From: Obrimoposthia wandeli
Taxonomy: Eukaryota
Assembly (NCBI GenBank): GCA_977020255.1
Contig: CDROCS010000356.1
Span: 310,001-374,000, forward strand
Direction: 5' to 3'
DNA length: 64,000 nt
Shown: piece by piece, positions 20,192-37,889 of the stretch
How positions within the stretch are numbered: position 1 is the first letter of the stretch
Layout: every line of letters starts with the position of its first letter
Translations under genes and position numbers: made by a program
The notes under the pieces: generated by a model
Seen by the model: the letters and a program-made list of their open reading frames with translations, nothing else
Database searches by the model: none
What the model was told of the DNA's origin: nothing

Positions 20192-20451
20192 TGGCAAAAG
20201 CAAAATTTGATAAATTAAAAAAAGGCTCAACGCAAACAAGTCCAATCACTCACAAGGATTTGCAAAAAAAACCTGGTCGCCCATTGGGTAGTAAAGTAAA
20301 AAAAGAACAAGCTAATGCTTCAATAACTATTGCACTCACTCCTACTCAAAAACAAGAACTTGAAGAATATGCGAAATCTGAGTTTAGATCAGTTGGTGGT
20401 GTAATCAAAATGTTATTAATTAGAAATGAGATCATTAACACAGATAAATAA
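20191..20451 (+). CDS. Small ParA partner, predicted ribbon-helix-helix (ParG/CopG-like)
   Basis: Start overlaps the parA stop; flexible basic N-terminus with KPGRP, then strand SITIAL, helix PTQKQELEEYAKSE, helix SVGGVIKMLL. Confidence 0.7.
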   Translation: MAKAKFDKLKKGSTQTSPITHKDLQKKPGRPLGSKVKKEQANASITIALTPTQKQELEEYAKSEFRSVGGVIKMLLIRNEIINTDK

Positions 20452-20490
20452 ATACAATTAAATATCTTGTATTTAATTGTATTTATATTA
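20449..20490. repeat. Dispersed palindrome, copy 2
   Basis: TAAATACAATTAAATATCTTGTATTTAATTGTATTTATATTA; 16 bp inverted arms (20448-20463 / 20471-20486). Confidence 0.85.
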
Positions 20491-20660
20491 GATTTAGGTG
20501 TTATTTTTTTCTAACTTTAATTATAATAATTAAATATAATATAATTATATTAGAATCCTTTAAGAGATAACTTGCCATACTAATAACATGTTACAACTTA
20601 TACAGTAGAAATACAATGTATAACAATTAAAAAATATATACAATTAAACAAGGATTAATT

Positions 20661-21401: not shown

Positions 21402-21932
21402 ATGGCTGCAAATGCAACTATTCATAAAGCTTTAGTAAATATAGCAAATATGGACCACCACTATTATAAAGAACATAATTTAACACTAGCACAACATCCG
21501 TCTGAAAATAATTTGAGATTAATGGCTAGACTAATAGCTTTTATTTTAAATGCCAATGATGATTTGGTATTTTGCAAAGGGATATCCCAAGATGATGAGC
21601 CTGACTTATGGCAAAAATCCTTAGGTGGAGATATAGAAATGTGGATAGATTTGGGACAACCTGATGAAAAACGTATCAAAAAAGCATGTGGACGATCAGA
21701 AAAAGTAATAATATATACATTTAAAGAAAGTGTTGCAAATGCTTGGTTTAAACAAATAGAAAATTCTCTTACTCGATTTAGAAACCTTAGAATTATTTAT
21801 CTTGACATTGATGGTGATATAGAAGCACTTACAAACCGTTCAATGAATTTACAATGTAATATACTTGATAACGAACTTACATTAATAACTGACGATAAGA
21901 GTGTTGTAGTTACTCAAAATATATTTAAATAA
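21402..21932 (+). CDS. yaeQ: YaeQ-family protein
   Basis: ATIHKA, AQHPSE, DEPDLWQK, WIDLGQPDEKRIKKAC. Confidence 0.92.
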   Translation: MAANATIHKALVNIANMDHHYYKEHNLTLAQHPSENNLRLMARLIAFILNANDDLVFCKGISQDDEPDLWQKSLGGDIEMWIDLGQPDEKRIKKACGRSEKVIIYTFKESVANAWFKQIENSLTRFRNLRIIYLDIDGDIEALTNRSMNLQCNILDNELTLITDDKSVVVTQNIFK

Positions 21933-21944
21933 TATTTCTTGAGT

Positions 21945-21986
21945 TAAATACAATTAAATATCTTGTAATTAATTGTATTTATATTA
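21945..21986. repeat. Dispersed palindrome, copy 3
   Basis: 42 bp, a single mismatch versus copy 2. Confidence 0.85.
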
Positions 21987-21989
21987 AAT

Positions 21990-22619
21990 TTAAGCCCAAA
22001 GATTAAACTCAGGGAGATGGGATACGGCTTTAATAATATCTGTTTTTGAAACAATCCCAACTAATACATTGTGTTGATTTACAATAGGGATAGCATCAAT
22101 TTTAAAAGTTATCATAACTTTTGCAACTCTTCTTATATCTGAGACAGGATCTGTTGTTATTAATTCAGATAAATTTATTTCATTGAGTGTTTTACTAAGA
22201 GTTCTTATACCATTCTCGAAATCATCTAATAATAAATTTAAAATAATTTTTTTATCTATCATGCCGATAATTTTATTTCCTATTGTAACTATTGGTATTT
22301 GACTTACTTCATTTTCTTTTAATATCGAATAAGTTTCTTTTACAGTAGCATTTAAATCAACTGTCACACAGCTTTTTGTCATTATTTCACTGACATGATA
22401 AATAACTGTACTTGTATCCATATTAGCAATTTTTTTATACGAATTAATTGCAGTTTCTTTGTTTTTAGTATTTTGATCTAAGAAATCTCCTAAAGCATGA
22501 TACATCTCATCATCAGGTTTAAATCTGGATTCAGCCGCTTTATCAACATTTTTTAACTCATATAAATTATCTGTAGTACTTCTAAACTTTACGCTACCAT
22601 TATTATAAACTGCAAACAT
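21990..22619 (-). CDS. CBS-domain protein
   Basis: VSEIMTKSCVTV; IDAIPIV..LVGIVSKTDII. Confidence 0.85.
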   Translation of the reverse strand: MFAVYNNGSVKFRSTTDNLYELKNVDKAAESRFKPDDEMYHALGDFLDQNTKNKETAINSYKKIANMDTSTVIYHVSEIMTKSCVTVDLNATVKETYSILKENEVSQIPIVTIGNKIIGMIDKKIILNLLLDDFENGIRTLSKTLNEINLSELITTDPVSDIRRVAKVMITFKIDAIPIVNQHNVLVGIVSKTDIIKAVSHLPEFNLWA

Positions 22620-22629
22620 ATTTTCTCCT

Positions 22630-24231
22630 TTATACGTTTAATAATTCGTCATACATTGCTTTAGCCGTTTTATCTGTTTCAACAATGATATGTGAGAGTC
22701 CCAAACTAGCTAATGATTCTCGCTCTTCAAATGTATTAACTTTTACAATAGTTTTTTTATCTTGTGCCATTTCATGTACAACTTCACATATATGATTCAA
22801 CTTTTGACTATTACCTATAGATATGATGATTGAAGAAGATTCATCTATATGAACAGATTTTAATAAATCTTTTTTAGCAGCATTTCCATAAATCACAGGT
22901 AATCCTTCTTTTTGAGCCTGTTTAACAGTATTTATATCGTGCTCAATAGCTATAAATTCTCCGCCACTTGCATGTATAAGTTTTGAAATAGTTTTTCCTA
23001 GCCTACCATAACCAATCAAAATAATATGATTTTTTAATTTATCTATTTCTAACTGAGGATACTCAAGATTAGTATTCTTTGTTTTACTTAACACATCAGA
23101 AATCGAAGAAATATTTTTAAGTACAAAAGGAGTGATAATCATAGATATAACAACTGTCACTATTAATATTTGTCCTAAAGTTGGATCAATAAGATCTCGT
23201 GCAAAAGAAAGTTCAAAGATAACTAGTGCAAACTCACCTAATTGAAACAATGAGATGGCAGTTTTAAAAGACTCTCTTTTTGTTAAAACAAATTTCATAA
23301 TTATAAATAGTATTCCTACTTTTATTAGAATAATTACAGGTAATAGTATTGCAATAATACTTATGTTTTCAAATATTATTTTAAAATCAAGTTGCATCCC
23401 AACTGATACAAAAAACACACCCAATAATAAATCTCTAAAGGGAACAAGGTCAGCTTCTACTTGATGTTTATAGTGGGTTTCAGATATCATCATACCTGCA
23501 ATAAATGCGCCTAATGAGTAAGAAAAACCAAAAAGGTGTGCGAGATATGAACTTCCTATAACAATCATTAAAATAGAACTGATAAATATTTCATTTGATT
23601 TTGCTTTTGTAACTCTTAATAAAAAAGGTTCAAGTAGATATTTTCCAATTATAAATAAACCTACAAGTAAAATTACCGCATCTATAAATGTTTCAATTAG
23701 TAAAGAAGATACAGAACTACCTGAAGATGAAAATATAGTTATCATAAGTAAAATAGGTATCACGGCTATATCTTGAAATAATAATACGCCCAGTACATGT
23801 TTACCATAGACTTTATTTATATCACCATTTTCATTTAATAGTTTTAAAACTATTGCTGTTGAAGATAATGCAAGTGCTAGACCTATTATAATTGCTGATT
23901 TCATCTCTATATTAAAAAAGTAGTTACCTATAAAAGTAAATACAACCGCTGTTAAAATAACCTGAGATCCACCATATAAAAAAACTTCTTTTTTCATTCT
24001 ATTCAAGTGATTGATAGAAAATTCTAAACCAATGGTAAACATAAGAAAAACCACACCAAACTCTGCTATTTCTTTTAGTTCATGATTATCTACAGCACTA
24101 TGCAGATCAAAACTATAAGTAATGATTGTTCCAGTAGCTATATATCCAATGATTGTAGGTATTCCAAATTTTTTTAAAAACAGGTTTAAAAAAGTTGAAA
24201 TGAAAATGGTAAATATAATAATCTCAAGCAT
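22630..24231 (-). CDS. CPA2 K+/H+ antiporter with C-terminal KTN/TrkA-N domain (KefB/C-like)
   Basis: AEFGVVFLMFTIGLE, LSSTAIV, LLFQDI, GAFIAG, IGYGRLG, YGNA. Confidence 0.9.
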   Translation of the reverse strand: MLEIIIFTIFISTFLNLFLKKFGIPTIIGYIATGTIITYSFDLHSAVDNHELKEIAEFGVVFLMFTIGLEFSINHLNRMKKEVFLYGGSQVILTAVVFTFIGNYFFNIEMKSAIIIGLALALSSTAIVLKLLNENGDINKVYGKHVLGVLLFQDIAVIPILLMITIFSSSGSSVSSLLIETFIDAVILLVGLFIIGKYLLEPFLLRVTKAKSNEIFISSILMIVIGSSYLAHLFGFSYSLGAFIAGMMISETHYKHQVEADLVPFRDLLLGVFFVSVGMQLDFKIIFENISIIAILLPVIILIKVGILFIIMKFVLTKRESFKTAISLFQLGEFALVIFELSFARDLIDPTLGQILIVTVVISMIITPFVLKNISSISDVLSKTKNTNLEYPQLEIDKLKNHIILIGYGRLGKTISKLIHASGGEFIAIEHDINTVKQAQKEGLPVIYGNAAKKDLLKSVHIDESSSIIISIGNSQKLNHICEVVHEMAQDKKTIVKVNTFEERESLASLGLSHIIVETDKTAKAMYDELLNV

Positions 24232-24318
24232 TACTTATTCTTTGATGCTATGATTACAAATATGATTACTACAAAAACTAATCCCATAAATGCAATTATT
24301 TCAATGTTTTCCATTTTA

Positions 24319-25023
24319 TTATCTCCTTTTTGATTTATTTGATCGATTTTTAGATTGTCGATCTTGGTTAAATTTATATTTAGCATTTTTCAAAACATCA
24401 ACTACCTCTATAGAAAGCTTTTGCATCTGTAAAATTACTTTTTTCTTGTCGTCAGCCACAGTTTGTGCATACACTTCAAACTTTTCTATTAAATGTAAAG
24501 TGTCATATTTTTTTATAAAAGGGTATAAAATGCTTGATTTTTCCTCCTCTTGGAACCAGATACTTAACATACTTATCACAAGTAGTTCTGGAACTGCTTC
24601 AGTTTTTGATGGAAATTGAGTAGATATTCTTTTTGCCATTGAATCATAATATGTTATTAATGGTTCTTCATATTTAGCAAGTTTTCTTAAATCATGATTG
24701 AGAGGAGCTTTTTTAGCATTTTGAACAAGTTTTATAAGATAATCTACATTTATCACATATTTTTGTAAGTCTGTTAATAACTCTCGCAATGCATTGTACA
24801 CATACTTTGTATCCTCTTCATCTTTCAATATTAATTTGTTATTTTTTGTATCAATCCGGTCAAAATACCTTTCCAATGCTGTTCTAGAAAAAACTAAAAT
24901 TGCTTCAGTTTTGACATCTCGAATTATTCTTGGTTTTATTCTGTTTTCACAATAATCCATTATTGAAAATATTTCCTTCTCTTGCATCTCTTTTAACATA
25001 CTATACTCTCCCACAAATTTCAT
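24319..25023 (-). CDS. Hypothetical protein
   Basis: 234 aa ORF; no recognised motif. Confidence 0.6.
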   Translation of the reverse strand: MKFVGEYSMLKEMQEKEIFSIMDYCENRIKPRIIRDVKTEAILVFSRTALERYFDRIDTKNNKLILKDEEDTKYVYNALRELLTDLQKYVINVDYLIKLVQNAKKAPLNHDLRKLAKYEEPLITYYDSMAKRISTQFPSKTEAVPELLVISMLSIWFQEEEKSSILYPFIKKYDTLHLIEKFEVYAQTVADDKKKVILQMQKLSIEVVDVLKNAKYKFNQDRQSKNRSNKSKRR

Positions 25024-25076
25024 AACATATTTATATGTTAAAACTATAGTATTATTATGTCAATTTCAATAGGTAT

Positions 25077-25099
25077 TATTTCTTGACAATTTCTTGATG
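25077..25099 (-). promoter_or_regulatory. Tandem TCAAGAAA direct repeat (11 bp period), putative response-regulator box
   Basis: TATTTCTTGACAATTTCTTGATG; 22/23 identical to 28936-28958. Confidence 0.6.
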
Positions 25100-25235
25100 C
25101 TTTTATCTTTATAGTTCAAATAATATATTATTATAAATTAAGAAATATTATCTATAATTAGAATACGTTAACAAGATAAATAACAAAGGCAAATATAGTG
25201 CTATTAAAGAAACTAAAAGATGTTGAATTTACATT

Positions 25236-25721
25236 ATGAGAAAAAAAATAAAGAAGATTTCAAATAATGAGCGTATTAATAAGTTTTTAGAAAAATACAA
25301 TATATCCAAAGTATATTTATCAAATAATCGTGAGATGGTTAGTAAAGGAACTTTAATAGGTTTATTTATAGCTCTTATGCCTATTCCTTTACAAATGCTA
25401 GTTATTATTTTACTGATGAGATTTTTTAAATTTAATTTACCAATAGCACTTCTACTATGTTGGATTACGAATCCATTTACTATGCCATTTATTTATTATG
25501 CAGAATATGTAGTAGGAAGTTTTTTATTAAATATAGAAATTGGAACTATTCAGATGACAGTTGAATGGTTTAATCAAAACTTCCAAGATATCTTTATCCC
25601 TTTATATTTTGGGGCATTTGTTTTAGCGTCTATAATAAGTGTGATTGCATACTTTTTACTGAACTTCCTGTGGATATATTTTGTAAAAAAGAATAAAAAA
25701 ATACATTATACTAAACGATAA
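25236..25721 (+). CDS. DUF2062-family membrane protein
   Basis: GTLIGLFIALMP, WITNPFT. Confidence 0.8.
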   Translation: MRKKIKKISNNERINKFLEKYNISKVYLSNNREMVSKGTLIGLFIALMPIPLQMLVIILLMRFFKFNLPIALLLCWITNPFTMPFIYYAEYVVGSFLLNIEIGTIQMTVEWFNQNFQDIFIPLYFGAFVLASIISVIAYFLLNFLWIYFVKKNKKIHYTKR

Positions 25722-25723
25722 AG

Positions 25724-26830
25724 CTATCTCTGTTGTCTATCAAAAAAGATAAAAAATACATTTTGTGAGTTTTCATATTTATGTAACAAACTCAAGTCAT
25801 GCATTTGTAAAATTTTATTTACAATATTTAGACCAAGTCCATGACCCAACTGTTGGTTTGGTTCTCTTGTAAATGGTTGTAAATAATAGATTAAATCATT
25901 CGAAAGTTTATTTGAACTATTTTTGATATAGAGTTCATCTTTAATCGATTCTATAGTAATAGGATATTTTATACTATATTTCATGGCATTATCTATAAGG
26001 TTTTTTAATACAATTGTTAAATAATAAAAATCCCCTGATATACTAAAATCATCAATAATATTTACTTCAACTTTTGATTCATCATCAATAGAGAGTTTTG
26101 ACAATGATTCTAAAATTAAGGTTGTAACTTTAAAAATGGATTGGTTTAATACAGCAAAATTAAGCTTTTCTCTTTCTAGCAGTTTACTTGTAAGTGTTTC
26201 GATATCATAAAAAACATTATTTATATTTTTAACTAAAGTTTCGTCAGCACTTTGCTTTATTTGCTCAATTAAAAATTTACCTTTTGTGATAGGAGTTTTT
26301 AACTCATGGCTAATATTTCGTAAAAGTTCTTCTCTAGAATGGATAATTTCTTCTTGCTTTTCTAAATAACTATTTAGATTTGTAGTTATCTGGCTTAACT
26401 CATTATTCTTACCTAAATCTATTTTGATACTATTTTCATCATTGCTTAACAATTGTAAAACACCAGAGTTTAGTTTAGATAACATCACTTTAATTTCATT
26501 GATTAGTTTAGTCGATATTATAAAAGACAAAGCAAATGCAATAAACAAAAGAACTAAAAGTTCAATCTTTATTTTATCAATAAAATCATCTTTGTCATTT
26601 TCAATTTCTTGAAGTTCATTTTTTAGAATACCAATATCTTCAGCAATATGAAGATCAATATTTGTATCAATATTTATAAAAAGTTCATCAATAATTTTAT
26701 CATATTTATCATTTTGAGATAAATGTATTGAGTTCAAATTAAATATAGTATAGAAAAAAACACCTATAATAAAAACAATAATAAGCAAAATCATTGAAAA
26801 TGAGATATAAAGTCTTTTTTTAATTGTCAT
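25724..26830 (-). CDS. Sensor histidine kinase (ArsS/RacS-like)
   Basis: ISHELKTPIT, NLIDNAMKY, GHGLGL. Confidence 0.88.
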   Translation of the reverse strand: MTIKKRLYISFSMILLIIVFIIGVFFYTIFNLNSIHLSQNDKYDKIIDELFINIDTNIDLHIAEDIGILKNELQEIENDKDDFIDKIKIELLVLLFIAFALSFIISTKLINEIKVMLSKLNSGVLQLLSNDENSIKIDLGKNNELSQITTNLNSYLEKQEEIIHSREELLRNISHELKTPITKGKFLIEQIKQSADETLVKNINNVFYDIETLTSKLLEREKLNFAVLNQSIFKVTTLILESLSKLSIDDESKVEVNIIDDFSISGDFYYLTIVLKNLIDNAMKYSIKYPITIESIKDELYIKNSSNKLSNDLIYYLQPFTREPNQQLGHGLGLNIVNKILQMHDLSLLHKYENSQNVFFIFFDRQQR

Positions 26831-27500
26831 TTATAAATTTATATCCTATTCCCCATATAGATTTGATGTATTTTGGTTCTTTTGAATCATCATTAATTTT
26901 AAATCTAATATTACTTACATGCATATCAATTGTTCTATTTTTAGTATCTTCTTTTAATGAGCTTTGTTTTATGATATTTTCTCGTGATATGATAATATTT
27001 ATATTATCAATAAGTATAAAAAAGATTTCTGATTCAATTTTTGTAAACTCTATTTCTGTATTATCGTACATAACACGTTTATTATTTTTATCGATAACTA
27101 GTTCATTGATTTTAATTAAATCAGTAGTAGAATATCTTTTTAATGTTGCTTCAATCCGTAATACTAATTCTCTTGGTTCATACGGTTTTGATAAATAATC
27201 ATCAGCACCAAGTTCAAAACCGTATATTTTATTGCCTATATCATCACGGGCAGTAGAGATGATGATTGGTATGTTTTTTATCTCTTTGAGCTTTTTAAAA
27301 AGATCAAATCCATCCATCCCTGGTAAACCAAGATCTAAAATTACAATATCATATTGTTGAAAGTTAGTAGAGAACTCTTCAAGTGCTTCAGTAGGATATG
27401 TAAAGATGGTAGATTTATAATTATAATCTTTTAAAAAATTACTGATTAAATTTTGTAAATCTAAATCATCTTCAATCAGTAAAACGTTTTTTATTTGCAA
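26820..27500 (-). CDS. OmpR-family response regulator
   Basis: LLIEDD, ILDLGLPGMDG, GADDYLSKP, RTIDMHVSNIR, SIWGIGY. Confidence 0.93.
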   Translation of the reverse strand: MQIKNVLLIEDDLDLQNLISNFLKDYNYKSTIFTYPTEALEEFSTNFQQYDIVILDLGLPGMDGFDLFKKLKEIKNIPIIISTARDDIGNKIYGFELGADDYLSKPYEPRELVLRIEATLKRYSTTDLIKINELVIDKNNKRVMYDNTEIEFTKIESEIFFILIDNINIIISRENIIKQSSLKEDTKNRTIDMHVSNIRFKINDDSKEPKYIKSIWGIGYKFINDN

Positions 27501-27502
27501 GT

Positions 27503-28840
27503 CTATTCAGCCTCTTTTTTAGAAACCATTCTTAACCAAAAATAACCAAACAATCCAGCAAATAAAGAAGCACACAATACGCCTATTTTAGCTTGAAAAA
27601 TAAGTTCAGGGCTATTTATAAAAGCAAGGTCTGCTACAAAAATAGACATTGTAAAACCAATACCACCTAAAAATGCTACACCAAATATTTGACTCATTGT
27701 ACTATTTTCAGGTAACTTTGCAATTTTTAATTTAATAGCTATCCACGCAACTCCAAAAATTCCAATAACTTTTCCAAGTATTAATCCTCCAATAATCCCT
27801 AAAGAAACAGGCTCTACAATAGTACTTCCAATAGAACTAAAATCGATACTTATACCAGCATTTGCTAATGCAAAAAGAGGAATAACAATAAGGGCAACAG
27901 GAAGATGTAAATCATGTTCAAGTTTGGCAGCTGGTGTTCCTACAGCATCGATTTTATCTTTTATATTTAAAAGTAATGCTTTTTGGTTCTCATGCATAAC
28001 ATTATCAGTTGAAACGGGATATTTACCATAATCATCCAGTAAATTTTTTGTATCATCGACAAAGGAAAATGGTGTTTCTTTGGGTTTAGAAGGAATTGTT
28101 AATGCTGCTATTACTCCTGCTATTGTTGCATGAACACCAGACTCTAGCATAAAAAACCACATTAATAATCCAACAATAAAATAAGGTAATATCATATGAA
28201 TACCAAATCTATTAAATGAAATCATAATTAAAAACATAACTCCAGCAAGACCAAGTGCCATCATATTAATAGTATCTGTATAAAAAATTGCTATTACTAA
28301 AACAGCTCCTAAATCATCCACAATAGCCAGTGCAACTAAAAAAGTCACAAGAGCCGCTGGTACTCTTTTACCTAATAATACCAATGCACTAATCGCAAAA
28401 GCAATATCTGTAGCCATTGGGATTCCCCAACCCCCTGCTCCTGCTGTTCCATAATTTATGTATAAATAAATTAATGCTGGAAAAACCATTCCACCAATAG
28501 CTGCAAGTATAGGTAACATAGCCACTTTAATGTTTGATAATTCACCTGCTAAAATCTCTCTTTTAATCTCTAATCCAATTATAAAGAAAAAGATTGCCAT
28601 AAGACCATCATTTATCCAATGATGTAAAGAATGAGACAATGCCCATGAGCCGATATTTAAATCTATTTTCATATGAAAAAAGTGAGCATAAATTTCAGAT
28701 AAAGGTGAATTAGCAAGGATGAGTGCAAGTATAGTCATAAACATCAATACTAAACCAGTAGTTGTTTGTGCATGCAAGAAATGTTCAAACGGTGTTGATA
28801 GTCTTTTAAAAGCCTTTTCCCAAGGTGCGTATAGTTTCAT
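27503..28840 (-). CDS. nhaA: Na+/H+ antiporter NhaA
   Basis: WINDGLMAIFF, GWGIPMATDIAF, LAIVDDLGA, GIGFTMS. Confidence 0.95.
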   Translation of the reverse strand: MKLYAPWEKAFKRLSTPFEHFLHAQTTTGLVLMFMTILALILANSPLSEIYAHFFHMKIDLNIGSWALSHSLHHWINDGLMAIFFFIIGLEIKREILAGELSNIKVAMLPILAAIGGMVFPALIYLYINYGTAGAGGWGIPMATDIAFAISALVLLGKRVPAALVTFLVALAIVDDLGAVLVIAIFYTDTINMMALGLAGVMFLIMISFNRFGIHMILPYFIVGLLMWFFMLESGVHATIAGVIAALTIPSKPKETPFSFVDDTKNLLDDYGKYPVSTDNVMHENQKALLLNIKDKIDAVGTPAAKLEHDLHLPVALIVIPLFALANAGISIDFSSIGSTIVEPVSLGIIGGLILGKVIGIFGVAWIAIKLKIAKLPENSTMSQIFGVAFLGGIGFTMSIFVADLAFINSPELIFQAKIGVLCASLFAGLFGYFWLRMVSKKEAE

Positions 28841-28935
28841 TTTGTTTTCCTACTCTTCTTTATTTTGTATATTAAATAACAAATATTTAATTCTTTAACA
28901 TATTGTATCAATAAAATGTAAATTTGCAAAGCAAC

Positions 28936-28958
28936 TATTTCTTGACACTTTCTTGATG
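28936..28958 (-). promoter_or_regulatory. Tandem TCAAGAAA direct repeat upstream of nhaA
   Basis: TATTTCTTGACACTTTCTTGATG, about 100 bp upstream of the nhaA start. Confidence 0.6.
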
Positions 28959-28985
28959 ATTAAAATATCATATAATTTTAGTCAT

Positions 28986-29032
28986 AAAAAAACCCTTATA
29001 AAAGTACTTTCGAAGTAAATTTAACAAGGGTT
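28986..29032 (-). terminator. Intrinsic terminator after the displaced methyltransferase 3' end
   Basis: AACCCTT / AAGGGTT stem followed by a T7 tract on the minus strand. Confidence 0.55.
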
Positions 29033-29047
29033 CATTAAAGGATAATT

Positions 29048-29316
29048 TTACTTATTTAATTTATCTGTCAAACCTTTTCCAAAAGCCTCTTCTATATAGG
29101 GGTTTACTTGCCATTCATTTTTGAACTCTTTGTATTCTTTTAAAACTTTATCTATGTTTGAATTATTATCAAAAAAAGCTCTTATCATTATATTTTTAGG
29201 AGTATGTTCCATATCTATGAACTCCAACACTTGTGTACGATAACCCATTATTTCTAATACATTTGCTCTTACGCTATCTGTAAGGAGCGAAGCTAGTTTT
29301 TCTTTTATGATTCCAT
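29048..29316 (-). pseudogene. Displaced 3' end (88 codons) of the SAM-methyltransferase gene at 36672-37889
   Basis: About 85% nt identity, no indels, to 36682-36937; homology ends abruptly at 29316. Confidence 0.9.
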
Positions 29317-29407
29317 TAAATTTAATTCAGTCATACTAACAAAAAAGGAAATCAAAAAGTAATAGAATTTTGGATAAAATAAAAGCTAAAATATTGTAAA
29401 TAAAAGA

Positions 29408-31741
29408 GTGGCTATGAAATTAGAAGAACTATTTGAAAAAGATGAAATAATTATTGAAAATGGAAAAAAAGAACCTAAAATAGTTTATAGTCCAAAAATT
29501 GTAAATAATAAAATATTTATTCCTTTAAAAAATGAATACAGAAATATTACAAATCAACCAATAGAACTTATAAGACAAAATTTTATTTGTAAGCTAATAA
29601 ATGATTATGGTTACACGCTAAATCAAATGGATCAAGAAGTAGAATTTAAAACTTTGAAAAATGATATAGGATATGTAACTGCTAACCTTGTTATTTGGAA
29701 AGATGAGTTTGAAAAGAAAAAGAATAAATCTGCGTTAATGGTAGTAGAATTTAAAACAGAAAAAACATTAAAAGTTGAAGATTGTTATCAAGGGTATTAT
29801 TATGCTACTAAAAATAAAGCCAAACTTTTTGCTATCTCAAATGGAAACGAACTTCAAGTATACAGAACGGTTGAAAATGAATTTCCAATAGTAAAAAATA
29901 TTCCAATGGCTAATGATTTATTTGATAATAAGAAACTAGAAGAAGCATTAGGTCAAACTAAAGAGTTTACAGGTGATGAATTTGCGAAACTACTTCATAA
30001 ATGTCATAATATTATACGAAACAATGATAAATTATCTCCAGAAGCTTCATTTGATGAGATTAGCAAAATATTGTTTATAAAAATAAGATATGAAAAAAAT
30101 CCAATACAAGAATCCATATTTTCTTTTAAACAATTTGAGCAACTAAAACAAAACCATCTTCAAGTGTTTAAAAAAGAAAATGCCAATCTAATAAAATATG
30201 AAGAACAAAATAAAACAAAATATATTAAATCTGGGGATTTTAAAAAAGCAGAAGAGATTGATAGGAAGATTATTGAATTAAAAAAAGAAGAGCCATTATC
30301 TTATATTCAAGAGCTGTTTAATGAAACTAAAAAAACATTTGAATCAGATGATATTTTTGATCAAAATGAGAAGATAAAACTTAGAGAAAAAAGTTTTGAG
30401 CAAATTGTAAAAGAGTTAGAAATATACAACCTTACTTCAACTAGTGCTGATATAAAGGGTATAGCTTTTGAAAAATTTCTAGGTCGAACTTTTAGGGGAG
30501 AGTTAGGACAGTTTTTTACGCCAAGAGCCATTGTTGATTTTATAGTTGATTTACTTGATCCTCAAGAAGATGAGCTTATCTGTGATCCATGTGCAGGTAG
30601 TGGTGGATTCTTGATAAAAAGTTTTGAAAGTGTTAAGAATAAAATAGATACAGAATTTATAAAAATAAAGAAAGAGAAACAAAAAGAACTTTTTGGAGAA
30701 AATCTAGAAAATATTTCTTCTAAAAATCTACAAAATAAATATGATAAATTTTTAGAAGAGATAAATAAAAAACAAGAAATAAAAATCGAAAAACTTTCAA
30801 AAAAATCTATTTTTGGAACAGATGCTAATCCACGTATGGCAAGAGTATCAAAAATGAATATGATAATGCATGGGGATGGTCATAATGGTATTCATCATAA
30901 TGATGGACTTTTAAATGTAAATGGTATATTTAGAAATAGATTTGATATGATAGTAACAAATCCACCATTTGGAACAAACCTTGATAAGAAATTTCCAATA
31001 GTTGAAAATGATGACAAGTATGACAATCCAATAATGATAGAAAAATATACTAAAGAGTATGGTGATGTATATATTAAAGAGATGGAACAAGTTACAAAAA
31101 ATATAGACAAACCTATACGAGGGCTTTTTGGTAAAGTCGGTGACAAATCTGGAGCTACAGAAGTGTTATTTATAGAAAGATGCTTAGATTTACTTAAACC
31201 AGGTGGAAGAATGGGTATTGTTCTTCCTGAAGGTGTTTTAAATAGTTCAAATTTACAAAGCATCAGAGAACATTTTGAAAGCAGAGCTAAAATAATTCTT
31301 ATTGTTTCTCTTCCTCAAGAGATATTTATAAGTTCAGGTGCTACAGTAAAAACAAGTCTAGTTTTTTTTAAAAAGTTTACAGAAAAAGAATTAGAACAGT
31401 ATCGAAATATAAAAATCGAAACTACAAAAGAGATAGAAACTACATTTAAAAAGGATAGAGAACTTCTTGAATCAAGATTAAAATTAAAAGGTGAAGAAGT
31501 TTTAAGTGCAGAAGAAAAGAAAATAGTCAGAGCTAAATTAAAAGAATTAAAAACACAAAGTGATGATAAAATTACTGTAAAAGTAAAAGAAGAATTTGAT
31601 TATGAAATTCCAATTTCAGATATAAAAAAAGCAGGTATCACATCTACTGGAGCAAAAGGAGACAATCAACTTCCTGAACTTTTAAAAGCATATACGGAAT
31701 ATAGAAAGAAAAATAATCTTTGGGCAAGAAACAATGACTAG
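29408..31741 (+). CDS. Restriction endonuclease (HsdR_N-like) fused to N6-adenine MTase (type IIB/IIG-like RM subunit)
   Basis: N-terminal QMDQEV..LMVVEFK..FAISNG; CHNIIRNND; GQFFTPR; DPCAGSGGFL (motif I); TNPPFG (motif IV). Confidence 0.85.
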   Translation: MAMKLEELFEKDEIIIENGKKEPKIVYSPKIVNNKIFIPLKNEYRNITNQPIELIRQNFICKLINDYGYTLNQMDQEVEFKTLKNDIGYVTANLVIWKDEFEKKKNKSALMVVEFKTEKTLKVEDCYQGYYYATKNKAKLFAISNGNELQVYRTVENEFPIVKNIPMANDLFDNKKLEEALGQTKEFTGDEFAKLLHKCHNIIRNNDKLSPEASFDEISKILFIKIRYEKNPIQESIFSFKQFEQLKQNHLQVFKKENANLIKYEEQNKTKYIKSGDFKKAEEIDRKIIELKKEEPLSYIQELFNETKKTFESDDIFDQNEKIKLREKSFEQIVKELEIYNLTSTSADIKGIAFEKFLGRTFRGELGQFFTPRAIVDFIVDLLDPQEDELICDPCAGSGGFLIKSFESVKNKIDTEFIKIKKEKQKELFGENLENISSKNLQNKYDKFLEEINKKQEIKIEKLSKKSIFGTDANPRMARVSKMNMIMHGDGHNGIHHNDGLLNVNGIFRNRFDMIVTNPPFGTNLDKKFPIVENDDKYDNPIMIEKYTKEYGDVYIKEMEQVTKNIDKPIRGLFGKVGDKSGATEVLFIERCLDLLKPGGRMGIVLPEGVLNSSNLQSIREHFESRAKIILIVSLPQEIFISSGATVKTSLVFFKKFTEKELEQYRNIKIETTKEIETTFKKDRELLESRLKLKGEEVLSAEEKKIVRAKLKELKTQSDDKITVKVKEEFDYEIPISDIKKAGITSTGAKGDNQLPELLKAYTEYRKKNNLWARNND

Positions 31742-32816
31742 ACAAACACTCGATACCATTATCAGTAAAATAAATATAGTACACAATAGTATACAATCTG
31801 ATGTTATAAAAAGTGTAAGCAATGGATTGACTTTACGAAACTGGATTATTGGATATTATATCGTTGAGTATGAACAAAGTGGTTCTGATATCTCTAACTA
31901 TGGGGATAAAATCATCTCTACAATTGCATTAAAACTATCTCATATAAAAGGGATGTCTAATACAAACTTAAAGCTTTATAGACAGTTCTATTTAAATTAT
32001 AAACAAATTGGTCAGGCAGTGACTGACCAATTGAAAATATCAAATATAGAGATAAGTCAGGCAGTGACTGACTTATCTTTAAAAGTACCGACAGATAAAC
32101 TTTTAAGGACTTGCACTTTTACCCATTTTGTAGAATTAATCAAAATTGATGATGATTTAAAAAGAATTTTTTATGAAATAGAGACAATCAAGGGAAACTG
32201 GAGTGCAAGAGAACTAAAAAGACAGATAAATAGTCAAACTTATGAAAGAATAGGATTGAGTCTAAATAAAAAGCAGATGATAAACTCTATTCATCATATA
32301 AGTGAAAATTTTATCCCTTCACAAATTATAAAAGATCCGTATATTTTAGAATTTACAGGACTTGAACAAAAAATAAAATATAGTGAAAATGACCTTGAGA
32401 GTTCGCTTTTAAATCATCTTCAAGATTTTTTACTAGAACTTGGTAATGGGTTTTGTTTTGAAGCTAGACAAAAAAGAATTTCTATAGATAATGAACATGA
32501 CAAAATAGACTTGGTTTTTTATCATAGAATTTTAAAATGTCATATTTTAATAGATTTAAAAATAAGTGAATTTAGCCATGGTGATGTGGGACAGATGAAT
32601 TTTTATCTAAACTATTATAAAAATGAGATAACTCTAAAAGATGACAATCCTCCAATAGGATTAATTTTATGTGCAAATAAAAATCACACAAAAGTAGAGT
32701 ATGCAATAGCTGGACTTGATAATAACTTGTTTGTATCAAAATATAAAATAAATTTACCATCACAACAAGAGATAGAAGAATTTATAGAAGATGAATTGGA
32801 AGATTTGATAAAATGA
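31734..32816 (+). CDS. yhcG: YhcG/DUF1016 PD-(D/E)xK nuclease-domain protein
   Basis: NWIIGYYIVE, WSARELKRQI, KDPYILEF, FLLELG.GF.F.ARQ, IDLVFYH, IDLK, NPPIGLIL. Confidence 0.9.
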   Translation: MTRQTLDTIISKINIVHNSIQSDVIKSVSNGLTLRNWIIGYYIVEYEQSGSDISNYGDKIISTIALKLSHIKGMSNTNLKLYRQFYLNYKQIGQAVTDQLKISNIEISQAVTDLSLKVPTDKLLRTCTFTHFVELIKIDDDLKRIFYEIETIKGNWSARELKRQINSQTYERIGLSLNKKQMINSIHHISENFIPSQIIKDPYILEFTGLEQKIKYSENDLESSLLNHLQDFLLELGNGFCFEARQKRISIDNEHDKIDLVFYHRILKCHILIDLKISEFSHGDVGQMNFYLNYYKNEITLKDDNPPIGLILCANKNHTKVEYAIAGLDNNLFVSKYKINLPSQQEIEEFIEDELEDLIK

Positions 32817-34163
32817 GTGAGTTACTAGAGTTTTCAAAGTTCACAAATCTATCCAATTGGAGTGTATCTCATCTTTTAGAAAATAACTTTCAATACAATA
32901 AAAACTACAATTTAGAAAAAATAGGAAATTTTTTAAAACGAAATAAAACACAAGTAATACTAAATGACAGCACCGAATATAAAAGAGTAAAGATAAAACT
33001 TTACAATAAAGGTGTTCTCATAAGAGATAGAGAATTTGGGAAAAATATAAAAACAAAAAAACAGTTTCTTGTAAAAAAAGGTCAGTTTTTATTATCAAAA
33101 ATAGATGCTAGAAATGGTGCTTTTGGTATAGCTAACAATGAAGTACATGATGCTATTATCACAGCTGATTTTCTTGCTTATGATGTCGATACTGCAAGAA
33201 TAGAACCATATTTTTTGGTACTTATGACTACAACAAAAAAGTTTCAACAGTTTGCTCAAAGTGCAAGTAGTGGTACAACGGGAAGACAAAGAATAGATGA
33301 AAAGAAGTTTTTAGATGTAACGATACCATTACCTTCTTTGGAAATTCAAAAAAGAATAGTGGAAAACTATCAAGATAAAATAGATTTGTCAATTTTTCAA
33401 GACAAAGAGGTTGAACAAAAAGAGAAAGAAATTGAAAAATATTTGTATAAAGAGTTAGGTATTGAATTCATTGATAGTAACAAAACTGATGATAACAATT
33501 TGTTGAAATTTGTAAATTATAAAGATATTAATTATTGGAGTCTTGAGAAAATAAATCAAAAAATCAATATTATATCAAATAAATATAAGTTAGTTAATAT
33601 TAATTCAATATGCTCATTAATTACAGATGGTACTCATCAAACAACAAAATACACAGACTCAGGAATAAAATTCCTCTCTGCAAAAAATGTTACCAAAGAA
33701 ATAATTAATTGGAAGAATATTAAGTATGTTTCTCAAGAGTCACATAATAATTATTGTAAACGAGTTCAACCAAGTTTTGGAGATATTTTATTAGCAAAGA
33801 ATGGTACTACTGGAATAGGTGCAATTGTAGATTGTTATGAAGTTTTTTCAATATATGTGAGTCTGGCATTATTAAGAGTTAATCCAGATTTGATTTTTAA
33901 TAAGTATTTATTATTTTTAATCAATTCATCTATTTTAAGAAAACAATTTTAAATTATTGTCAACAGGAAGTGCGCAACCTAATTTAAATGCAGCTAAAGT
34001 GAAAAATTTTGAAGTTCCTTTGCCTTCCTTAGAAGTACAAAATAAGATTATTATTCAATTAAATATGTTGAAAAAAGAAATAGAAGATTTGAAAAAAAAG
34101 TCTTTGTTAAATGTAGAACAAGCATTAATAAAATTTGAAAAGGAAATTTTTAATGAAACTTAA
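32813..34163 (+). pseudogene. hsdS: HsdS-like specificity subunit, frameshifted at TTTT 33947-33950
   Basis: Two TRDs and two conserved PLPSLE.Q repeats; removing one T gives RKQFKLLSTGSAQPNL in frame. Confidence 0.85.
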
Positions 34164-34290
34164 AAAACTTTATATAGAAGAATATAAAAATTTAAATAGA
34201 TTTACATTAGACTTTACAAACAATGGAGGAACTACTGTATTAATAGGTAATGGAGGGGTAACTTAAATTCAGACACTTTATTTCACAATT

Positions 34291-35121
34291 CTAAGCTACC
34301 ATTTCCATTTGTAACATCTTAGTAACTTCTTCAAATCTAACAGGGGATAAATTTCTTAAATAACTATGTGATCTCGTTCTATTATAATAAAACTCAATAT
34401 ATTCAAATATCTCTTTTTTTGCTTGTTTTTTCGTATAAAAATATGTGCTATAAACAAGCTCTTGTTTTAATGATTTAAAAAAACTCTCTGCAACAGCATT
34501 ATCCCAACAATTCCCTTTTCTTGACATACTTTGAATTATTCCATGTTTAAGTAATAAATCTTTATGACTATATGATGCGTATTGAGAACCTCTATCTGTA
34601 TGCCACAATAAGCCTTTAGGAGGATTTCTATGGCTTATAGCCATTTTTAAAGCATCATTAACTAATGATACTTTCATAGTATCAGCCATAGACCAACCTA
34701 CAATTTTTCTTGAGTATAAATCAATAACAGTTGCGAGATATAACCAGCCTTCTCCTGTTGCTATGTAAGTGATATCTCCTACATATTTTTCATCAGGATT
34801 TGAAGCATAAAAATCTCTATTTAAAAGATTTGGTGCAATAGGTAAATTATGATTTGAATCAGTTGTATTTTTGTATCTACGTTTCATGTTGACTTTTAGG
34901 TTTAAATCTTTCAGTATATTAGATATACGTCTTCTTGATACTATAAGTCCATAGAGTTCTAGTAATTTATCTTTAATTCTCCTAGTACCATAGTTATTTC
35001 TACCTTGAATAAATATGGCTTCTATCAGACTATTAAGTTGTTTATCAACTTTTTTAATAAAACATCCAGCGTTAACCCAATGGTAATATGATGATTTATC
35101 TACTTTTATTACTTTACACAT
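34291..35121 (-). CDS. IS3 transposase OrfB (DDE)
   Basis: YVGDITY, VIDLYSR, HTDRGSQY, GNCWDNAVAESFF; its frame extends upstream as KYAWIQ. Confidence 0.93.
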   Translation of the reverse strand: MCKVIKVDKSSYYHWVNAGCFIKKVDKQLNSLIEAIFIQGRNNYGTRRIKDKLLELYGLIVSRRRISNILKDLNLKVNMKRRYKNTTDSNHNLPIAPNLLNRDFYASNPDEKYVGDITYIATGEGWLYLATVIDLYSRKIVGWSMADTMKVSLVNDALKMAISHRNPPKGLLWHTDRGSQYASYSHKDLLLKHGIIQSMSRKGNCWDNAVAESFFKSLKQELVYSTYFYTKKQAKKEIFEYIEFYYNRTRSHSYLRNLSPVRFEEVTKMLQMEMVA

Positions 35122-35168
35122 TAATTTGATACTAAAACTCTTTTGATTTCCTTGTATCCACGCATACT

Positions 35169-35459
35169 TTATAGAGTTTCTTTTGCAAAGTATGCTGTTG
35201 CTTTTTTTAATATATCACGCTCTTGTTTCAGTATCTTATTCTCACGACGAAGTCTTTTAAGTTCTTCTTCTATTGGTTCTTTTGGAATGGAAATATTATT
35301 GTCATTCAATGGAAGATTATGTACTTTTCTATAGGCACTTACCCAATTATATAATGTTTGTGGATTTAAATCTAAATCGGATGCTACTTTTACAACCGAT
35401 TCCTTCTCGTTTAATATCAACTGTACTGTTGAATCCTTAAATTCTTTACTATATTTCAT
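35169..35459 (-). CDS. IS3 transposase OrfA (HTH + leucine zipper)
   Basis: YSKEFK, VASDLDLNPQTLYNWV, ELKRLRRENKILKQERDILKKATAYFAKE. Confidence 0.92.
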   Translation of the reverse strand: MKYSKEFKDSTVQLILNEKESVVKVASDLDLNPQTLYNWVSAYRKVHNLPLNDNNISIPKEPIEEELKRLRRENKILKQERDILKKATAYFAKETL

Positions 35460-36671
35460 TTCTTACCTTTATTCATTTATTTTACTTAAATCTCTTTAAG
35501 TTTTTTGTCTGAATTTAGGTTACCACTCCAGGGTTAGTTAAAAATCGTGAACTAATGCGATTTATATCTAATATTATAGATGATGAAAATAAAATTAATT
35601 ATTCAACACTTCTAAAATATTTTAATTCTCAACTTCCCAATACAAAACAGGATTTTTTAAATTATTTTTTAAATTGTAAATCAAGACAATTAATTGATAT
35701 GACAGAACTAAATGAACAAAACATATCAAGTGAAGGTGAGCAAAAACTAGATTTAATTGAATTACTATTGGATATGTTAGCAGAAAAAAACACATTGATT
35801 TTAATTGATGAGATAGATTCACATATACATGTAGCAAATAAGAAAAAAATTAAAGAATTAATTAAAAAAACAGACGATATTGAAAATGAAATAATCTTAG
35901 TAACTCATTCGCCAACACTAACACATACTTTTGATAGTAAACATATCTCAATGATAGTAGATGGTAAAGTAGAAGATAAAACAAAACAAGAGATGTTTTC
36001 TCATATTACAGATGGGATATTTAATTATCAAGAACAATCTATATTTTTATCATCAACAAAAGATATTATTTTAATAGTAGAAGGGAAACACGATAAGATA
36101 CATATTGAAGAAGCGTTTAAAAGATTGAAAGACGAATTTGTTGGATTGAATTTTGATATATTTTCTGTAGATGGAGCAGATAATATTAATCAATTATTAA
36201 TCGGTATTAAATCATCTTTTAGAATGTTTGATAAAACAAAAAAGTATATTGGTTTATTTGATTGTGATGAAAAAGGAAGAGATATTGTTGGTAAAAATGC
36301 AAGAAGAACAAAATTTGTTTCTATTGGAAAAAGTAAAAACTTTTATCATATGTATTTACCATTTGAATGATACGAAAAAGATTTTGAAATTGAAAATATG
36401 TATAAAGATAATATATTGCAACAGGCATACATAAAAGCTATTAATCTTACAACCGTAAATATTAATAAAAATACAATTGAAAAAGAAGCAAAAAATCAAT
36501 TATCTCTAATGGCTCAAAATGATTTAGTTGATAGTGATTTTGAACATTTTAAAGAATTTTTTACATTAATAGGAAAAGTTAAAGATTTATAAACTAATAA
36601 ATAAATCTTTTCAGAATAAGTATATGATTAATTAGTTAGTCATATAAATTATCCTTAGAATTTAATTTTTT

Positions 36672-37889
36672 CTAACCTAACTTATCAGTCAAACCTTTGC
36701 CAAAAGCTTCTTCTATATAAGGAGAAATTTTCCATTCATTTTTGAACTCAATATACTGTTTAACTACTTTATCTACATTTGGAGTTTCTTCAAAGAAGGC
36801 TCTGATCATGATATTTTTAGGAGTATGTTCCATATCTATGAACTCTAACACTTGAGTACGATAACCCATAATTTCTAATACATTAGCTCTCACACTATCA
36901 GTAAGCAACGAAGCTAGTTTTTCTTTTATGATTCCATATTTCATCATAGGAATCATTTTCTCATTTTTTATTTTCTTTAAGAATTCATGTTGACAACATG
37001 GAACTGCTAAAATAACTTTAGCTCCCCAGTTAACAGCTTTTGCTAACGCTTCATCTGTTGCAGTATTACAAGCATGCAAAGATATAACCATATCTACATT
37101 TGTAAATTGATCAAAACCTTTGATATCACCTTGTTCAAATCGTAAATCTTTAAAGTTTAATTTTTTTGCTAAATCAGAACAAAATGAGATAACATTTTCT
37201 TTTAAATCAAGTCCAACAATCTCTACGTTGTATCCCATTTTTAATACAAGATAATCATACAGTGCAAAAGTAAGATACGCTTTTCCACATCCAAAATCAA
37301 TGATTCTGATAGTTTTACTCTTATCTAAATAAGGGATACAATCAGATACTAACTCTAAATAACGATTGATTTGTTTAAACTTGTCATACTTAGCATTTAC
37401 TATTTTACCTTGCTGCGTCATGATTCCAAGTTCTATTAAAAATGGTGTTAGTTCACCTTCATTTAAAATATATTTTTTCTTTTTATTATGAGTTGGTTCT
37501 TCAAAGACTCTTGTAGCTGTTTTTGTATGGATTTTAGCAACGCCTTGTTTACTAATAAGTATTTGATAATCGTGACCCACAGTATTTATAACCGCTTGTT
37601 TAAAATATGTTTCTAGTAGTTGAGACATTTCAATTTTTGTTTCTTCATTACTTAAATTTTTATGTTCTACATTTTTATCATAAAAATATTCAAATTGATG
37701 TTTTTCTTCATTTTTGATAATTACTTTTTTTATAGTTACTTTATTAAAAGTTTTTTCACTCTTATTTCTTATACCACTAAAAACAGCTTTTATTATCGTT
37801 TCTTCGTTTGTTACTTTTTCCATCAATTCAATTATATTTTGCATAATGTTTAAAATTCCTTTTAAAATTTCTTTTTCGTATAATAGCAA
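36672..37889 (-). CDS. SAM-dependent methyltransferase (Methyltrans_32-like); its 3' end is island-derived
   Basis: IIDFGCGKAYLTF, SLHACNTATD, VPCCQHE; true start may be MQNIIE. Confidence 0.85.
   Translation of the reverse strand: MLLYEKEILKGILNIMQNIIELMEKVTNEETIIKAVFSGIRNKSEKTFNKVTIKKVIIKNEEKHQFEYFYDKNVEHKNLSNEETKIEMSQLLETYFKQAVINTVGHDYQILISKQGVAKIHTKTATRVFEEPTHNKKKKYILNEGELTPFLIELGIMTQQGKIVNAKYDKFKQINRYLELVSDCIPYLDKSKTIRIIDFGCGKAYLTFALYDYLVLKMGYNVEIVGLDLKENVISFCSDLAKKLNFKDLRFEQGDIKGFDQFTNVDMVISLHACNTATDEALAKAVNWGAKVILAVPCCQHEFLKKIKNEKMIPMMKYGIIKEKLASLLTDSVRANVLEIMGYRTQVLEFIDMEHTPKNIMIRAFFEETPNVDKVVKQYIEFKNEWKISPYIEEAFGKGLTDKLG

What the first reader, a model, noticed from the sequence alone, without database searches (positions are those of the whole stretch)
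29048..36937. Integrase-less defence island that replaces the 3' end of a SAM-methyltransferase gene
Seen: two copies of the last ~88 codons, 7621 bp apart. By manual count there are 38 mismatches in 256 nt and no indels; the first 48 codons are identical in protein yet differ at 13 synonymous sites. Homology starts at a perfect 29 bp block and stops sharply. The orphan copy keeps a terminator. No recombinase gene lies inside. Inference: the two ends evolved under selection in different lineages, and the island arrived carrying its own allele of the gene end, via an integrase acting in trans or homology-assisted capture. This suggests a defence hotspot at a target gene that I do not recognise as a described attB.
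Basis: partly seen in the sequence, partly recalled or inferred. Interest (0 to 1): 0.7.

Follow-up and report, generated by a model that had tools for sequence, protein, structure and literature searches.

The report
Defence operon flanked by duplicated gene end
A worn-out 7.3-kb anti-phage operon sits between an intact methyltransferase gene and a leftover copy of that gene's last 88 codons; this is an example of a known, integrase-free way for restriction-modification units to enter genomes, not a new integration hotspot.

Summary
The repeat is real: 271 nt at 29046-29316 and 36667-36937, 84% identical, no indels, dN/dS 0.115. The two copies fall in different clades, so this is not a local duplication.

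The interval holds a decayed defence operon:
- a long HsdM-like methylase with an N-terminal nuclease-like domain
- a DUF1016 nuclease
- hsdS, split by one extra T
- an OLD-family gene cut by an IS3 element, with about 190 codons deleted and an in-frame stop

So a DDE transposase does lie inside, but it is a later arrival. There is no tyrosine or serine recombinase, and no room for a lost one inside the operon.

Contigs of another study show an island-free form: a B-like gene end that runs on into the gene body, directly upstream of nhaA. The orphan is therefore the resident end.

The hotspot or attB idea fails. The 30 Arcobacteraceae genomes with this gene each have one copy. None of about 55 distinct loci has an orphan or island gene downstream, and the neighbours annotated are housekeeping genes.

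Best reading (0.55): import by host recombination, the known class "R-M insertion with long target duplication". An integrase-type origin keeps 0.2.

The scan's notes record this stretch twice and no similar case elsewhere in this genome.

The parts
36672..37844 (-). Intact SAM-dependent methyltransferase gene (390 aa from the ATG; the mechanical ORF runs to 37889)
   Evidence: Pfam Methyltransf_32, E 2.5e-40. Relatives are 389-391 aa.
36667..36937 (-). Repeat copy A: the last 88 codons and stop of the intact gene
   Evidence: Its nearest relatives are the same as those of the 5' part.
29046..29316 (-). Repeat copy B: orphan last 88-89 codons of a different allele of the same gene
   Evidence: 95% protein identity to P0011 and 97% to P0121. 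Sits in a clade with L092, L002 and L094/95. Continues into the gene body in X3 and X4 contigs.
29288..29316 (-). 29-nt block identical in both copies, at the 5' edge of the homology (the twin is at 36909-36937)
   Evidence: It carries a TCG codon state whose third-base G is seen in only 4 of 46 aligned gene sequences (orphan B, aligned separately, shares it).
28971..29040 (-). 70-nt hairpin plus U-run after the orphan's stop codon (terminator-like); absent from the island-free allele
   Evidence: Fold. Skipped by X3 record 9. Not called by the consensus scan.
29408..31741 (+). 777-aa long HsdM-type adenine methylase with an N-terminal HSDR_N_2 nuclease-like domain
   Evidence: Pfam N6_Mtase plus HSDR_N_2. 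PADLOC MTase_I PDLC03018, E 1e-259, full length. MADS2-like but below the NCBIfam cut-off.
31734..32816 (+). DUF1016 / YhcG PD-(D/E)xK nuclease (PADLOC defence candidate PDC-S02)
32813..34163 (+). hsdS specificity gene, split into 379 + 68 codons by one extra T in a T-run at about 33947-33950
   Evidence: Relatives have one ORF of 437-453 aa. I could not tell a real mutation from a homopolymer assembly error.
34153..34248 (+). First 32 codons of an OLD-family ATPase-TOPRIM gene, ending in the Walker A motif
   Evidence: 50% identical to residues 7-38 of full-length OLD in L178, E 5e-9.
34251..35530 (-). IS3-family insertion sequence: 25-nt inverted repeats, orfA 35169-35459, orfB 34291-35121. 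No target-site duplication.
   Evidence: Only diverged copies elsewhere in the assembly, 82-90%. Absent from the X4 copy of the operon.
35531..36592 (+). Rest of the OLD gene, from about residue 230 of the full-length protein, with an in-frame TGA at 36368-36370.
   Evidence: 56% identical to L178 residues 293-508..
22628..28975 (-). Resident block running from nhaA to a Kef-type exchanger: nhaA, response regulator, histidine kinase, DUF2062, a 234-aa ORF, Kef-type exchanger
   Evidence: Pfam. Syntenic at 83-84% with contig C5857 of the same assembly. The nhaA upstream region is joined to the B-like gene end in X3.
21402..22619 (.). CBS-domain gene (21990-22619, minus strand) and yaeQ (21402-21932, plus strand): the genes that directly follow the methyltransferase in relatives
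   Evidence: L086 has the methyltransferase followed by the CBS gene. C3501, L096, L107, L116, L118, L134 and L136 have it followed by convergent yaeQ.

Best explanation
The locus is a recombination scar. The resident arrangement was the methyltransferase gene followed directly by nhaA. DNA from another Arcobacteraceae lineage then entered. It carried a methylase-based defence operon next to that lineage's own copy of the gene, certainly its last 88 codons and probably the whole gene.

Host recombination fixed this DNA. One crossover lay in or upstream of the gene. The other lay at or next to a 29-nt stretch identical in both alleles. The resident gene's last 88 codons were left stranded beyond the operon, still attached to nhaA.

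No dedicated integrase took part. The IS3 element came later and, with point mutations, has since wrecked the operon.

Shown: the repeat, its two-lineage origin, the island-free form, and the absence of an integrase and of recurrence. Inferred: the direction of import, its extent, and recombination after DNA uptake as the route.
For: - Repeat and selection signature.
- Island-free form: X3 record 9 joins the nhaA upstream region to a B-like end (26 mismatches in 433 nt), then continues into the gene body.
- Trees: the 5' part is sister to C2843 (100/96). Allele A is nearest C2843, L085 and L086. Allele B is in another clade (86/86) with L092, L002 and L094/95.
- The 5' part is 92.7% identical to C2843, against 77-90% for flanking genes. 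Against C3501 both are about 84%.
- No tyrosine or serine recombinase lies in the interval.
- The IS-linked deletion is internal to OLD, so no gene was lost there.
- The gene is single-copy in all 30 of 184 family genomes that have it. No orphan or island gene lies downstream in about 55 loci.
- The same operon occurs at about 93% identity without the IS in another metagenome, so it does move between hosts.
- The class is described, mostly in naturally competent bacteria including Helicobacter and Campylobacter (PMC2853133).
- A member of the family is naturally transformable (PMC8308473).
Against: - The donor arrangement was never seen. No other genome shows this operon beside this gene.
- The flanks of the X4 copy could not be read.
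- The 5' part of the island-free relative's gene is unknown, so 'whole gene imported' rests on indirect comparisons in a gene that is visibly mosaic.
- Alleles A and B are about equally distant from C2843 at nucleotide level (88.4% and 86.5%).
- A perfect identity block exactly at the homology edge is what a site-specific or Campbell-type insertion predicts. By chance it has odds of roughly 3% (8 of 267 start positions, from the run lengths).
- Natural competence of this organism was not tested.
Confidence: 0.55

Rival explanations
1. A site-specific integrative island of the e14/icd kind. The element carried a replacement for the last 88 codons and recombined at a core within the 29-nt block. 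Its integrase was later lost or acts in trans.
For: - The identity block sits exactly at the 5' edge of the homology, the homology runs to just past the stop, and the gene is kept intact.
- The block carries a codon state whose third-base G is seen in only 4 of 46 aligned gene sequences, shared by A and B.
- The orphan is the resident end.
- The layout matches icd and icdC around e14 (PMC13626634).
Against: - No integrase is inside, and there is no room for one. The operon is contiguous, the IS deletion is internal to OLD, and only 79 and 91 nt separate the operon from the repeats.
- No second case turned up at this gene in 30 genomes and about 55 loci.
- Relatives of the operon sit elsewhere.
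- The other element's ends share no core with these junctions.
- The 5' part groups with A rather than with B.
Confidence: 0.2
2. A two-step history. The genome once held two complete copies of the gene, one native and one acquired with neighbouring DNA. A later deletion or the arrival of the operon removed the first 317 codons of one copy. The block at the edge is coincidence.
For: - The region is a patchwork of blocks with different relatives.
- Synteny around this gene is poor throughout the family.
- Other decay is present: the IS, the deletion and a stop codon.
Against: - No genome examined has two copies.
- X3 shows a B-like gene end running on into the gene body beside nhaA, so B's gene was the resident one and not an extra copy.
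- The edge identity has only about 3% odds by chance.
Confidence: 0.15
3. An assembly artefact: a chimeric contig joining two co-resident strains of a multi-organism assembly.
For: The assembly holds several related Arcobacteraceae contigs.
Against: An independent 3.7-kb contig of the likely source sample spans the island/orphan junction with 2 mismatches. A strain switch at a shared repeat would not produce a duplication with 7.3 kb in between.
Confidence: 0.02

Closest known systems
Restriction-modification units inserted with long target duplication (Nobusato et al. 2000; Furuta, Abe and Kobayashi 2010, PMC2853133)
   Same: - A methylase-based unit under 20 kb.
- Flanked by direct repeats of the target far longer than 30 bp.
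- An empty site in a relative.
- No mobility gene responsible for the insertion.
- The repeat spans the stop codon, so the target gene stays intact.
- Host from the same phylum as Helicobacter and Campylobacter.
   Different: - The two repeat copies here are only 84% identical, with a strong synonymous bias. They come from two lineages and not from duplication of one target.
- No separate restriction subunit is present.
- The unit is decayed.
e14 prophage in the icd gene of E. coli K-12, with the icdC C-terminal pseudogene (PMC13626634; Hill et al. 1989, from my own knowledge)
   Same: The intact gene's 3' end is supplied by the inserted DNA. The original C-terminal fragment is stranded at the far end. 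The differences between the copies are mostly synonymous.
   Different: e14 has its own integrase and excisionase, excises on SOS induction, and recurs at icd in many strains. None of these features is seen here.
Homology-facilitated illegitimate recombination during natural transformation (de Vries and Wackernagel 2002, from my own knowledge; PMC3240628)
   Same: Foreign DNA enters with homology on one side only, no mobile-element enzyme is needed, and duplications or deletions form at the joint.
   Different: It predicts a microhomology joint at an arbitrary place. It does not predict a 29-nt block identical between the two gene copies at the edge. The donor sequence needed to test the joint is not available.
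Type I R-M and MADS-like defence operons with an OLD-family (GajA-like) ATPase-TOPRIM
   Same: HsdM-like and HsdS-like genes, plus an OLD-type ATPase-TOPRIM.
   Different: There is no HsdR. The methylase carries an N-terminal nuclease-like domain. Relatives add a GHKL ATPase with a nuclease-like tail rather than a UvrD helicase. NCBIfam MADS2 scores well below its cut-off.

Membership tests
R-M insertion with long target duplication (criteria of PMC2853133) | Inserted segment shorter than 20 kb | tested here: met
   7350 nt between the repeats, or 6070 nt without the IS.
R-M insertion with long target duplication (criteria of PMC2853133) | Target duplication longer than 30 bp | tested here: met
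   271 nt.
R-M insertion with long target duplication (criteria of PMC2853133) | Both R and M gene homologues in the insert | tested here: inconclusive
   M and S are present. There is no HsdR. The only nuclease-like parts are the HSDR_N_2 domain of the methylase and the DUF1016 protein.
R-M insertion with long target duplication (criteria of PMC2853133) | Empty site in a related genome | tested here: met
   X3 record 9 joins a B-like gene end to the nhaA upstream region at 94% identity and continues into the gene body.
R-M insertion with long target duplication (criteria of PMC2853133) | No other mobile element responsible for the insertion | tested here: met
   There is no integrase. The IS3 lies inside OLD, is absent from the X4 copy, and does not bound the insert.
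Integrase-type integrative island with 3'-end replacement (e14/icd type) | Tyrosine or serine recombinase encoded by the element | tested here: not met
   Pfam scan of all ORFs in the interval. The only PF00589 match within the window is at 58725-59231, in another element.
Integrase-type integrative island with 3'-end replacement (e14/icd type) | Identical core at both junctions, at the edge of the homology | tested here: met
   A 29-nt identical block at the 5' edge. This is also compatible with a homologous crossover.
Integrase-type integrative island with 3'-end replacement (e14/icd type) | Recurrent use of the same site by related or other elements | tested here: not met
   One copy in each of the 30 family genomes that have the gene. 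No orphan in about 95 loci. Breakpoints are not clustered at nt 906.
Integrase-type integrative island with 3'-end replacement (e14/icd type) | Excision to a circle and a restored site | not testable with these tools
IS3-family insertion sequence (34251-35530) | orfA/orfB DDE transposase and terminal inverted repeats TG...CA | tested here: met
   HTH_Tnp_1 plus rve domains; NCBIfam transpos_IS3, E 1.5e-96; 25-nt inverted repeats.
IS3-family insertion sequence (34251-35530) | Short (3-4 bp) target-site duplication | tested here: not met
   The flanks differ and about 190 OLD codons are missing next to the IS. This fits an adjacent deletion.
Complete type I restriction-modification system | HsdR restriction subunit alongside HsdM and HsdS | tested here: not met
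   No HsdR here or in five related operons.

The most novel reading that the evidence does not exclude
The operon may travel as a homology-armed cassette. It carries a copy of the target gene, or of its end, on one side and keeps a short piece of that gene on the other. Any recipient with the gene can then install it by RecA after DNA uptake without losing the gene. The repeats can later pop it out again.

That would be an integrase-free life cycle of the sort Kobayashi's group proposed for R-M units, which their 2010 paper said still lacked experimental evidence for the release and re-infection steps.
Probability: 0.2. Interest if true: 0.6.

Novelty: new member of a known kind. Interest (0 to 1): 0.3.

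Why it matters
Defence genes are often found in islands with no visible means of movement. This locus gives a clean natural example, with the island-free form recovered from another sample. Here such an operon entered by recombination at the end of an ordinary gene, and the two repeat copies record both lineages involved. This supports host recombination after DNA uptake as a route for spreading methylase-based defence in Campylobacterota. It also shows that a duplicated gene end does not by itself indicate an integrase site. It does not reveal a new integration hotspot or a new kind of element.

Tried and rejected
- **Local duplication:** rejected. The copies sit in different clades and dS is 0.75.
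- **Integrase lost through the IS3-linked deletion:** rejected. The left and right OLD pieces match one full-length protein with only residues of about 39-229 missing.
- **Integrase of the neighbouring element (window 48.9-59.4 kb) acting in trans:** no core similarity above the shuffled background.
- **Defence hotspot:** rejected. The downstream genes annotated in relatives are housekeeping genes.
- **Breakpoint clustering at the block:** the maximum chi-square scan found clusters only where the substitution rate changes, at nt 330-360 and 1050-1110. This is a weak test.
- **Other orphan fragments in the protein database:** the 64-66-aa hits start at the first in-frame Met and look like contig-edge gene calls, so they are not evidence.
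- **Assigning alleles by nucleotide identity:** inconclusive, about 88% for both.
- My first fragment translations were out of frame and were redone.
Full report
**Observation**

The window holds a direct repeat of 271 nt, at 29046-29316 and 36667-36937. It is 84% identical, spaced 7621 nt apart, and has no indels. The right copy (A) is the last 88 codons of an intact 390-aa Methyltransf_32 gene on the minus strand. The left copy (B) is an orphan.

- In register there are 43 mismatches in 267 nt.
- Codons 2-49 encode the same protein and differ at 12 synonymous codons.
- There are 14 non-synonymous codons, 12 of them in the C-terminal tail (the other two are the first and the stop codon), and B is one codon longer.
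- dS is 0.745, dN 0.086 and the ratio 0.115.
- Homology begins with a 29-nt identical block and ends about 5 nt after the stop codon. A 35-nt identical run also lies inside the repeat.

**What lies between the copies**

The interval holds one operon reading towards the methyltransferase gene:

- **Methylase:** a 777-aa HsdM-type protein with an N-terminal HSDR_N_2 nuclease-like domain. Its best PADLOC match is a long 'type I methyltransferase' family at E 1e-259. MADS2-like hits are below the cut-off.
- **DUF1016/YhcG nuclease:** PADLOC candidate PDC-S02.
- **hsdS:** split by one extra T in a T-run.
- **OLD-family ATPase-TOPRIM gene:** described below.

The OLD gene starts at 34153. After 32 codons, inside Walker A, it is interrupted by a 1280-nt IS3 element with 25-nt inverted repeats, an orfA/orfB transposase and no target duplication. 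It resumes at 35531 at about residue 230 of full-length relatives.

Three conclusions follow:

- A DDE recombinase does lie inside, but it is a later insertion. It is absent from a 93%-identical copy of the operon in another metagenome.
- The deletion next to the IS is internal to OLD, so no integrase was lost there.
- Only 79 nt and 91 nt separate the operon from the two repeat copies. No Phage_integrase match falls in the interval.

**Relatives**

The window belongs to a 1.35-Gb multi-organism assembly that holds other Arcobacteraceae contigs.

What follows the gene in relatives differs from case to case:

- On C3501 it is followed after about 60 nt by convergent yaeQ.
- On C2843 it is followed by a different 5.4 kb of sequence.
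- In L086 it is followed directly by the CBS-domain gene that sits at 21990-22619 here.
- Seven public metagenome loci also show the gene followed by yaeQ (directly in six).

Across 184 family genomes only 30 carry the gene, each once and with no orphan. In about 55 non-redundant loci nothing downstream matches the gene end or any island gene. The neighbours differ from locus to locus, and the representatives annotated are ordinary genes: mnmG, carB, dnaJ, a molybdopterin oxidoreductase, an ABC-F ATPase, rhodanese and yaeQ. No integrase or defence gene appeared among them. This is poor synteny, not a defence hotspot.

The operon itself occurs in 8 of 184 family genomes at 56-67% protein identity. 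There it runs methylase, optional DUF1016, HsdS, then in three of the five operons read a full-length OLD followed by a further ORF of 604-652 aa (a GHKL ATPase where annotated, in L178). It sits in defence or conjugative-element contexts and never beside this gene.

nhaA is never near the gene in family genomes. The block from the Kef-type exchanger gene to nhaA (22628-28975) is syntenic only with contig C5857 of the same assembly.

**The island-free form**

Contigs of four public runs were laid on 28301-34300.

- **X1, the likely source sample:** a 3.7-kb contig spans the operon/orphan junction with 2 mismatches, so the junction is real.
- **X3, another study:** a 446-nt contig joins the nhaA upstream region (28814-28970) to a B-like end (29041-29316), with 26 mismatches in 433 nt. 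It skips the 70-nt hairpin. Beyond 29316 it continues with letters that match the gene body just upstream of the repeat.
- **X4:** a 7.1-kb contig carries the operon at about 93% identity, with a swapped second hsdS recognition domain and no IS.

A relative therefore has a B-like gene end, continuous with the gene body, directly upstream of nhaA, without the operon. B and its link to nhaA are the resident state.

**Which part came in**

In trees, the 5' part of the gene is sister to C2843 (100/96), with L085 next. Allele A lies nearest C2843, L085 and L086. Allele B falls in another clade (86/86) with L092, L002 and L094/95. L002's genome also has the closest nhaA among the family's species genomes.

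At protein level B is 95% identical to the C-terminus of P0011 and 97% to P0121. The closest full-length relative, P0001, has an A-like tail.

The 5' part is 92.7% identical to C2843 (97% over its first 225 nt), whereas flanking genes are 77-90% identical. Against C3501 both are about 84%.

Together this suggests that the whole intact gene, not only its end, came from a C2843-like lineage along with the operon. The evidence is indirect:

- The gene is mosaic across lineages.
- At nucleotide level A and B are almost equally far from C2843.
- The island-free relative's 5' part could not be read.

**Mechanism**

The data fit import by host recombination. One exchange lay in or upstream of the gene. 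The second lay at the block, which stranded the resident 3' end.

The 29-nt identity at the edge has about 3% odds by chance, from the run lengths. It also includes a TCG codon state whose third-base G occurs in only 4 of 46 aligned gene sequences (A, L085, L089 and one not identified) and which B shares. This favours a true crossover between an incoming piece of the gene and the resident gene over a random illegitimate joint. Such a crossover could be homologous or site-specific.

Several points argue against a dedicated integrase:

- No integrase is present, and there is no room for a lost one.
- There is no second case at this gene.
- Breakpoints do not cluster at the block.
- The junctions show no similarity to the ends of the integrase-bearing element elsewhere in the window.

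I give 0.55 to recombination without a dedicated recombinase, 0.2 to an integrase-type element, 0.15 to a two-copy intermediate and 0.02 to an artefact.

**Comparison with what is known**

Furuta, Abe and Kobayashi (PMC2853133) define 'R-M insertion with long target duplication'. Their criteria are an insert under 20 kb, a duplication over 30 bp, an empty site in a relative and no mobility gene. They list repeats up to about 400 bp that often span a start or stop codon, which leaves the target gene intact. Most cases are in naturally competent species, including Helicobacter and Campylobacter.

This locus meets those criteria, except that no separate restriction gene is present. The mechanism of that class is not established.

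The layout also mirrors icd and icdC around prophage e14 (PMC13626634), but e14 has an integrase and recurs. A member of the family, Aliarcobacter butzleri, is naturally transformable (PMC8308473).

The new element here is modest. The two repeat copies are clearly from two lineages, which shows that at least one copy arrived with the operon.

**Limits**

- The hsdS extra T could be a homopolymer error of the assembly.

Noticed in passing
window 20449-20496 and 21945-21992; also L089 and L093: A 48-nt repeat occurs twice in the window at 96% identity. Its 38-nt core recurs at 95-97% in intergenic DNA of two metagenome relatives. It looks like a small REP- or MITE-like palindromic family.
   Followed up: no
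window 36672-37844: The methyltransferase gene is present in only 30 of 184 Arcobacteraceae genomes. It sits beside different housekeeping genes in nearly every relative, and it has 47-58% identical homologues in Paenibacillus and other Firmicutes. Its function is unknown (Methyltransf_32; no NCBIfam match).
   Followed up: partly
window 37620-37844 against C2843: The first 225 nt of the gene are 97% identical to contig C2843 of the same assembly, against a background of about 83%. This looks like a recent recombination tract between co-resident lineages.
   Followed up: partly
window 33463-33944: In the X4 copy of the operon this part of hsdS, the second target-recognition domain, is replaced by 475 unrelated letters while the flanks stay at about 93%. 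This is a recognition-domain swap.
   Followed up: no
L177, L178, L181 (relatives of the operon): A conserved five-gene module: long methylase, optional DUF1016, HsdS, OLD ATPase-TOPRIM, then (annotated in L178) a 604-aa GHKL ATPase with a nuclease-like tail. It lacks HsdR and has MADS-like secondary hits. It may be an undescribed methylation-linked defence type.
   Followed up: partly
window 28971-29040: A 70-nt hairpin plus U-run lies between the orphan's stop codon and the nhaA upstream region. It is missing from the island-free allele in run X3. It is either an inserted terminator-like element or a deletion in the relative.
   Followed up: partly
G000 as a whole: The assembly is 1.35 Gb in 6912 contigs and holds at least three or four related Arcobacteraceae genomes (contigs C356, C2843, C3501, C5857), with over 100 Phage_integrase matches. 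'Own genome' searches therefore mix organisms.
   Followed up: no
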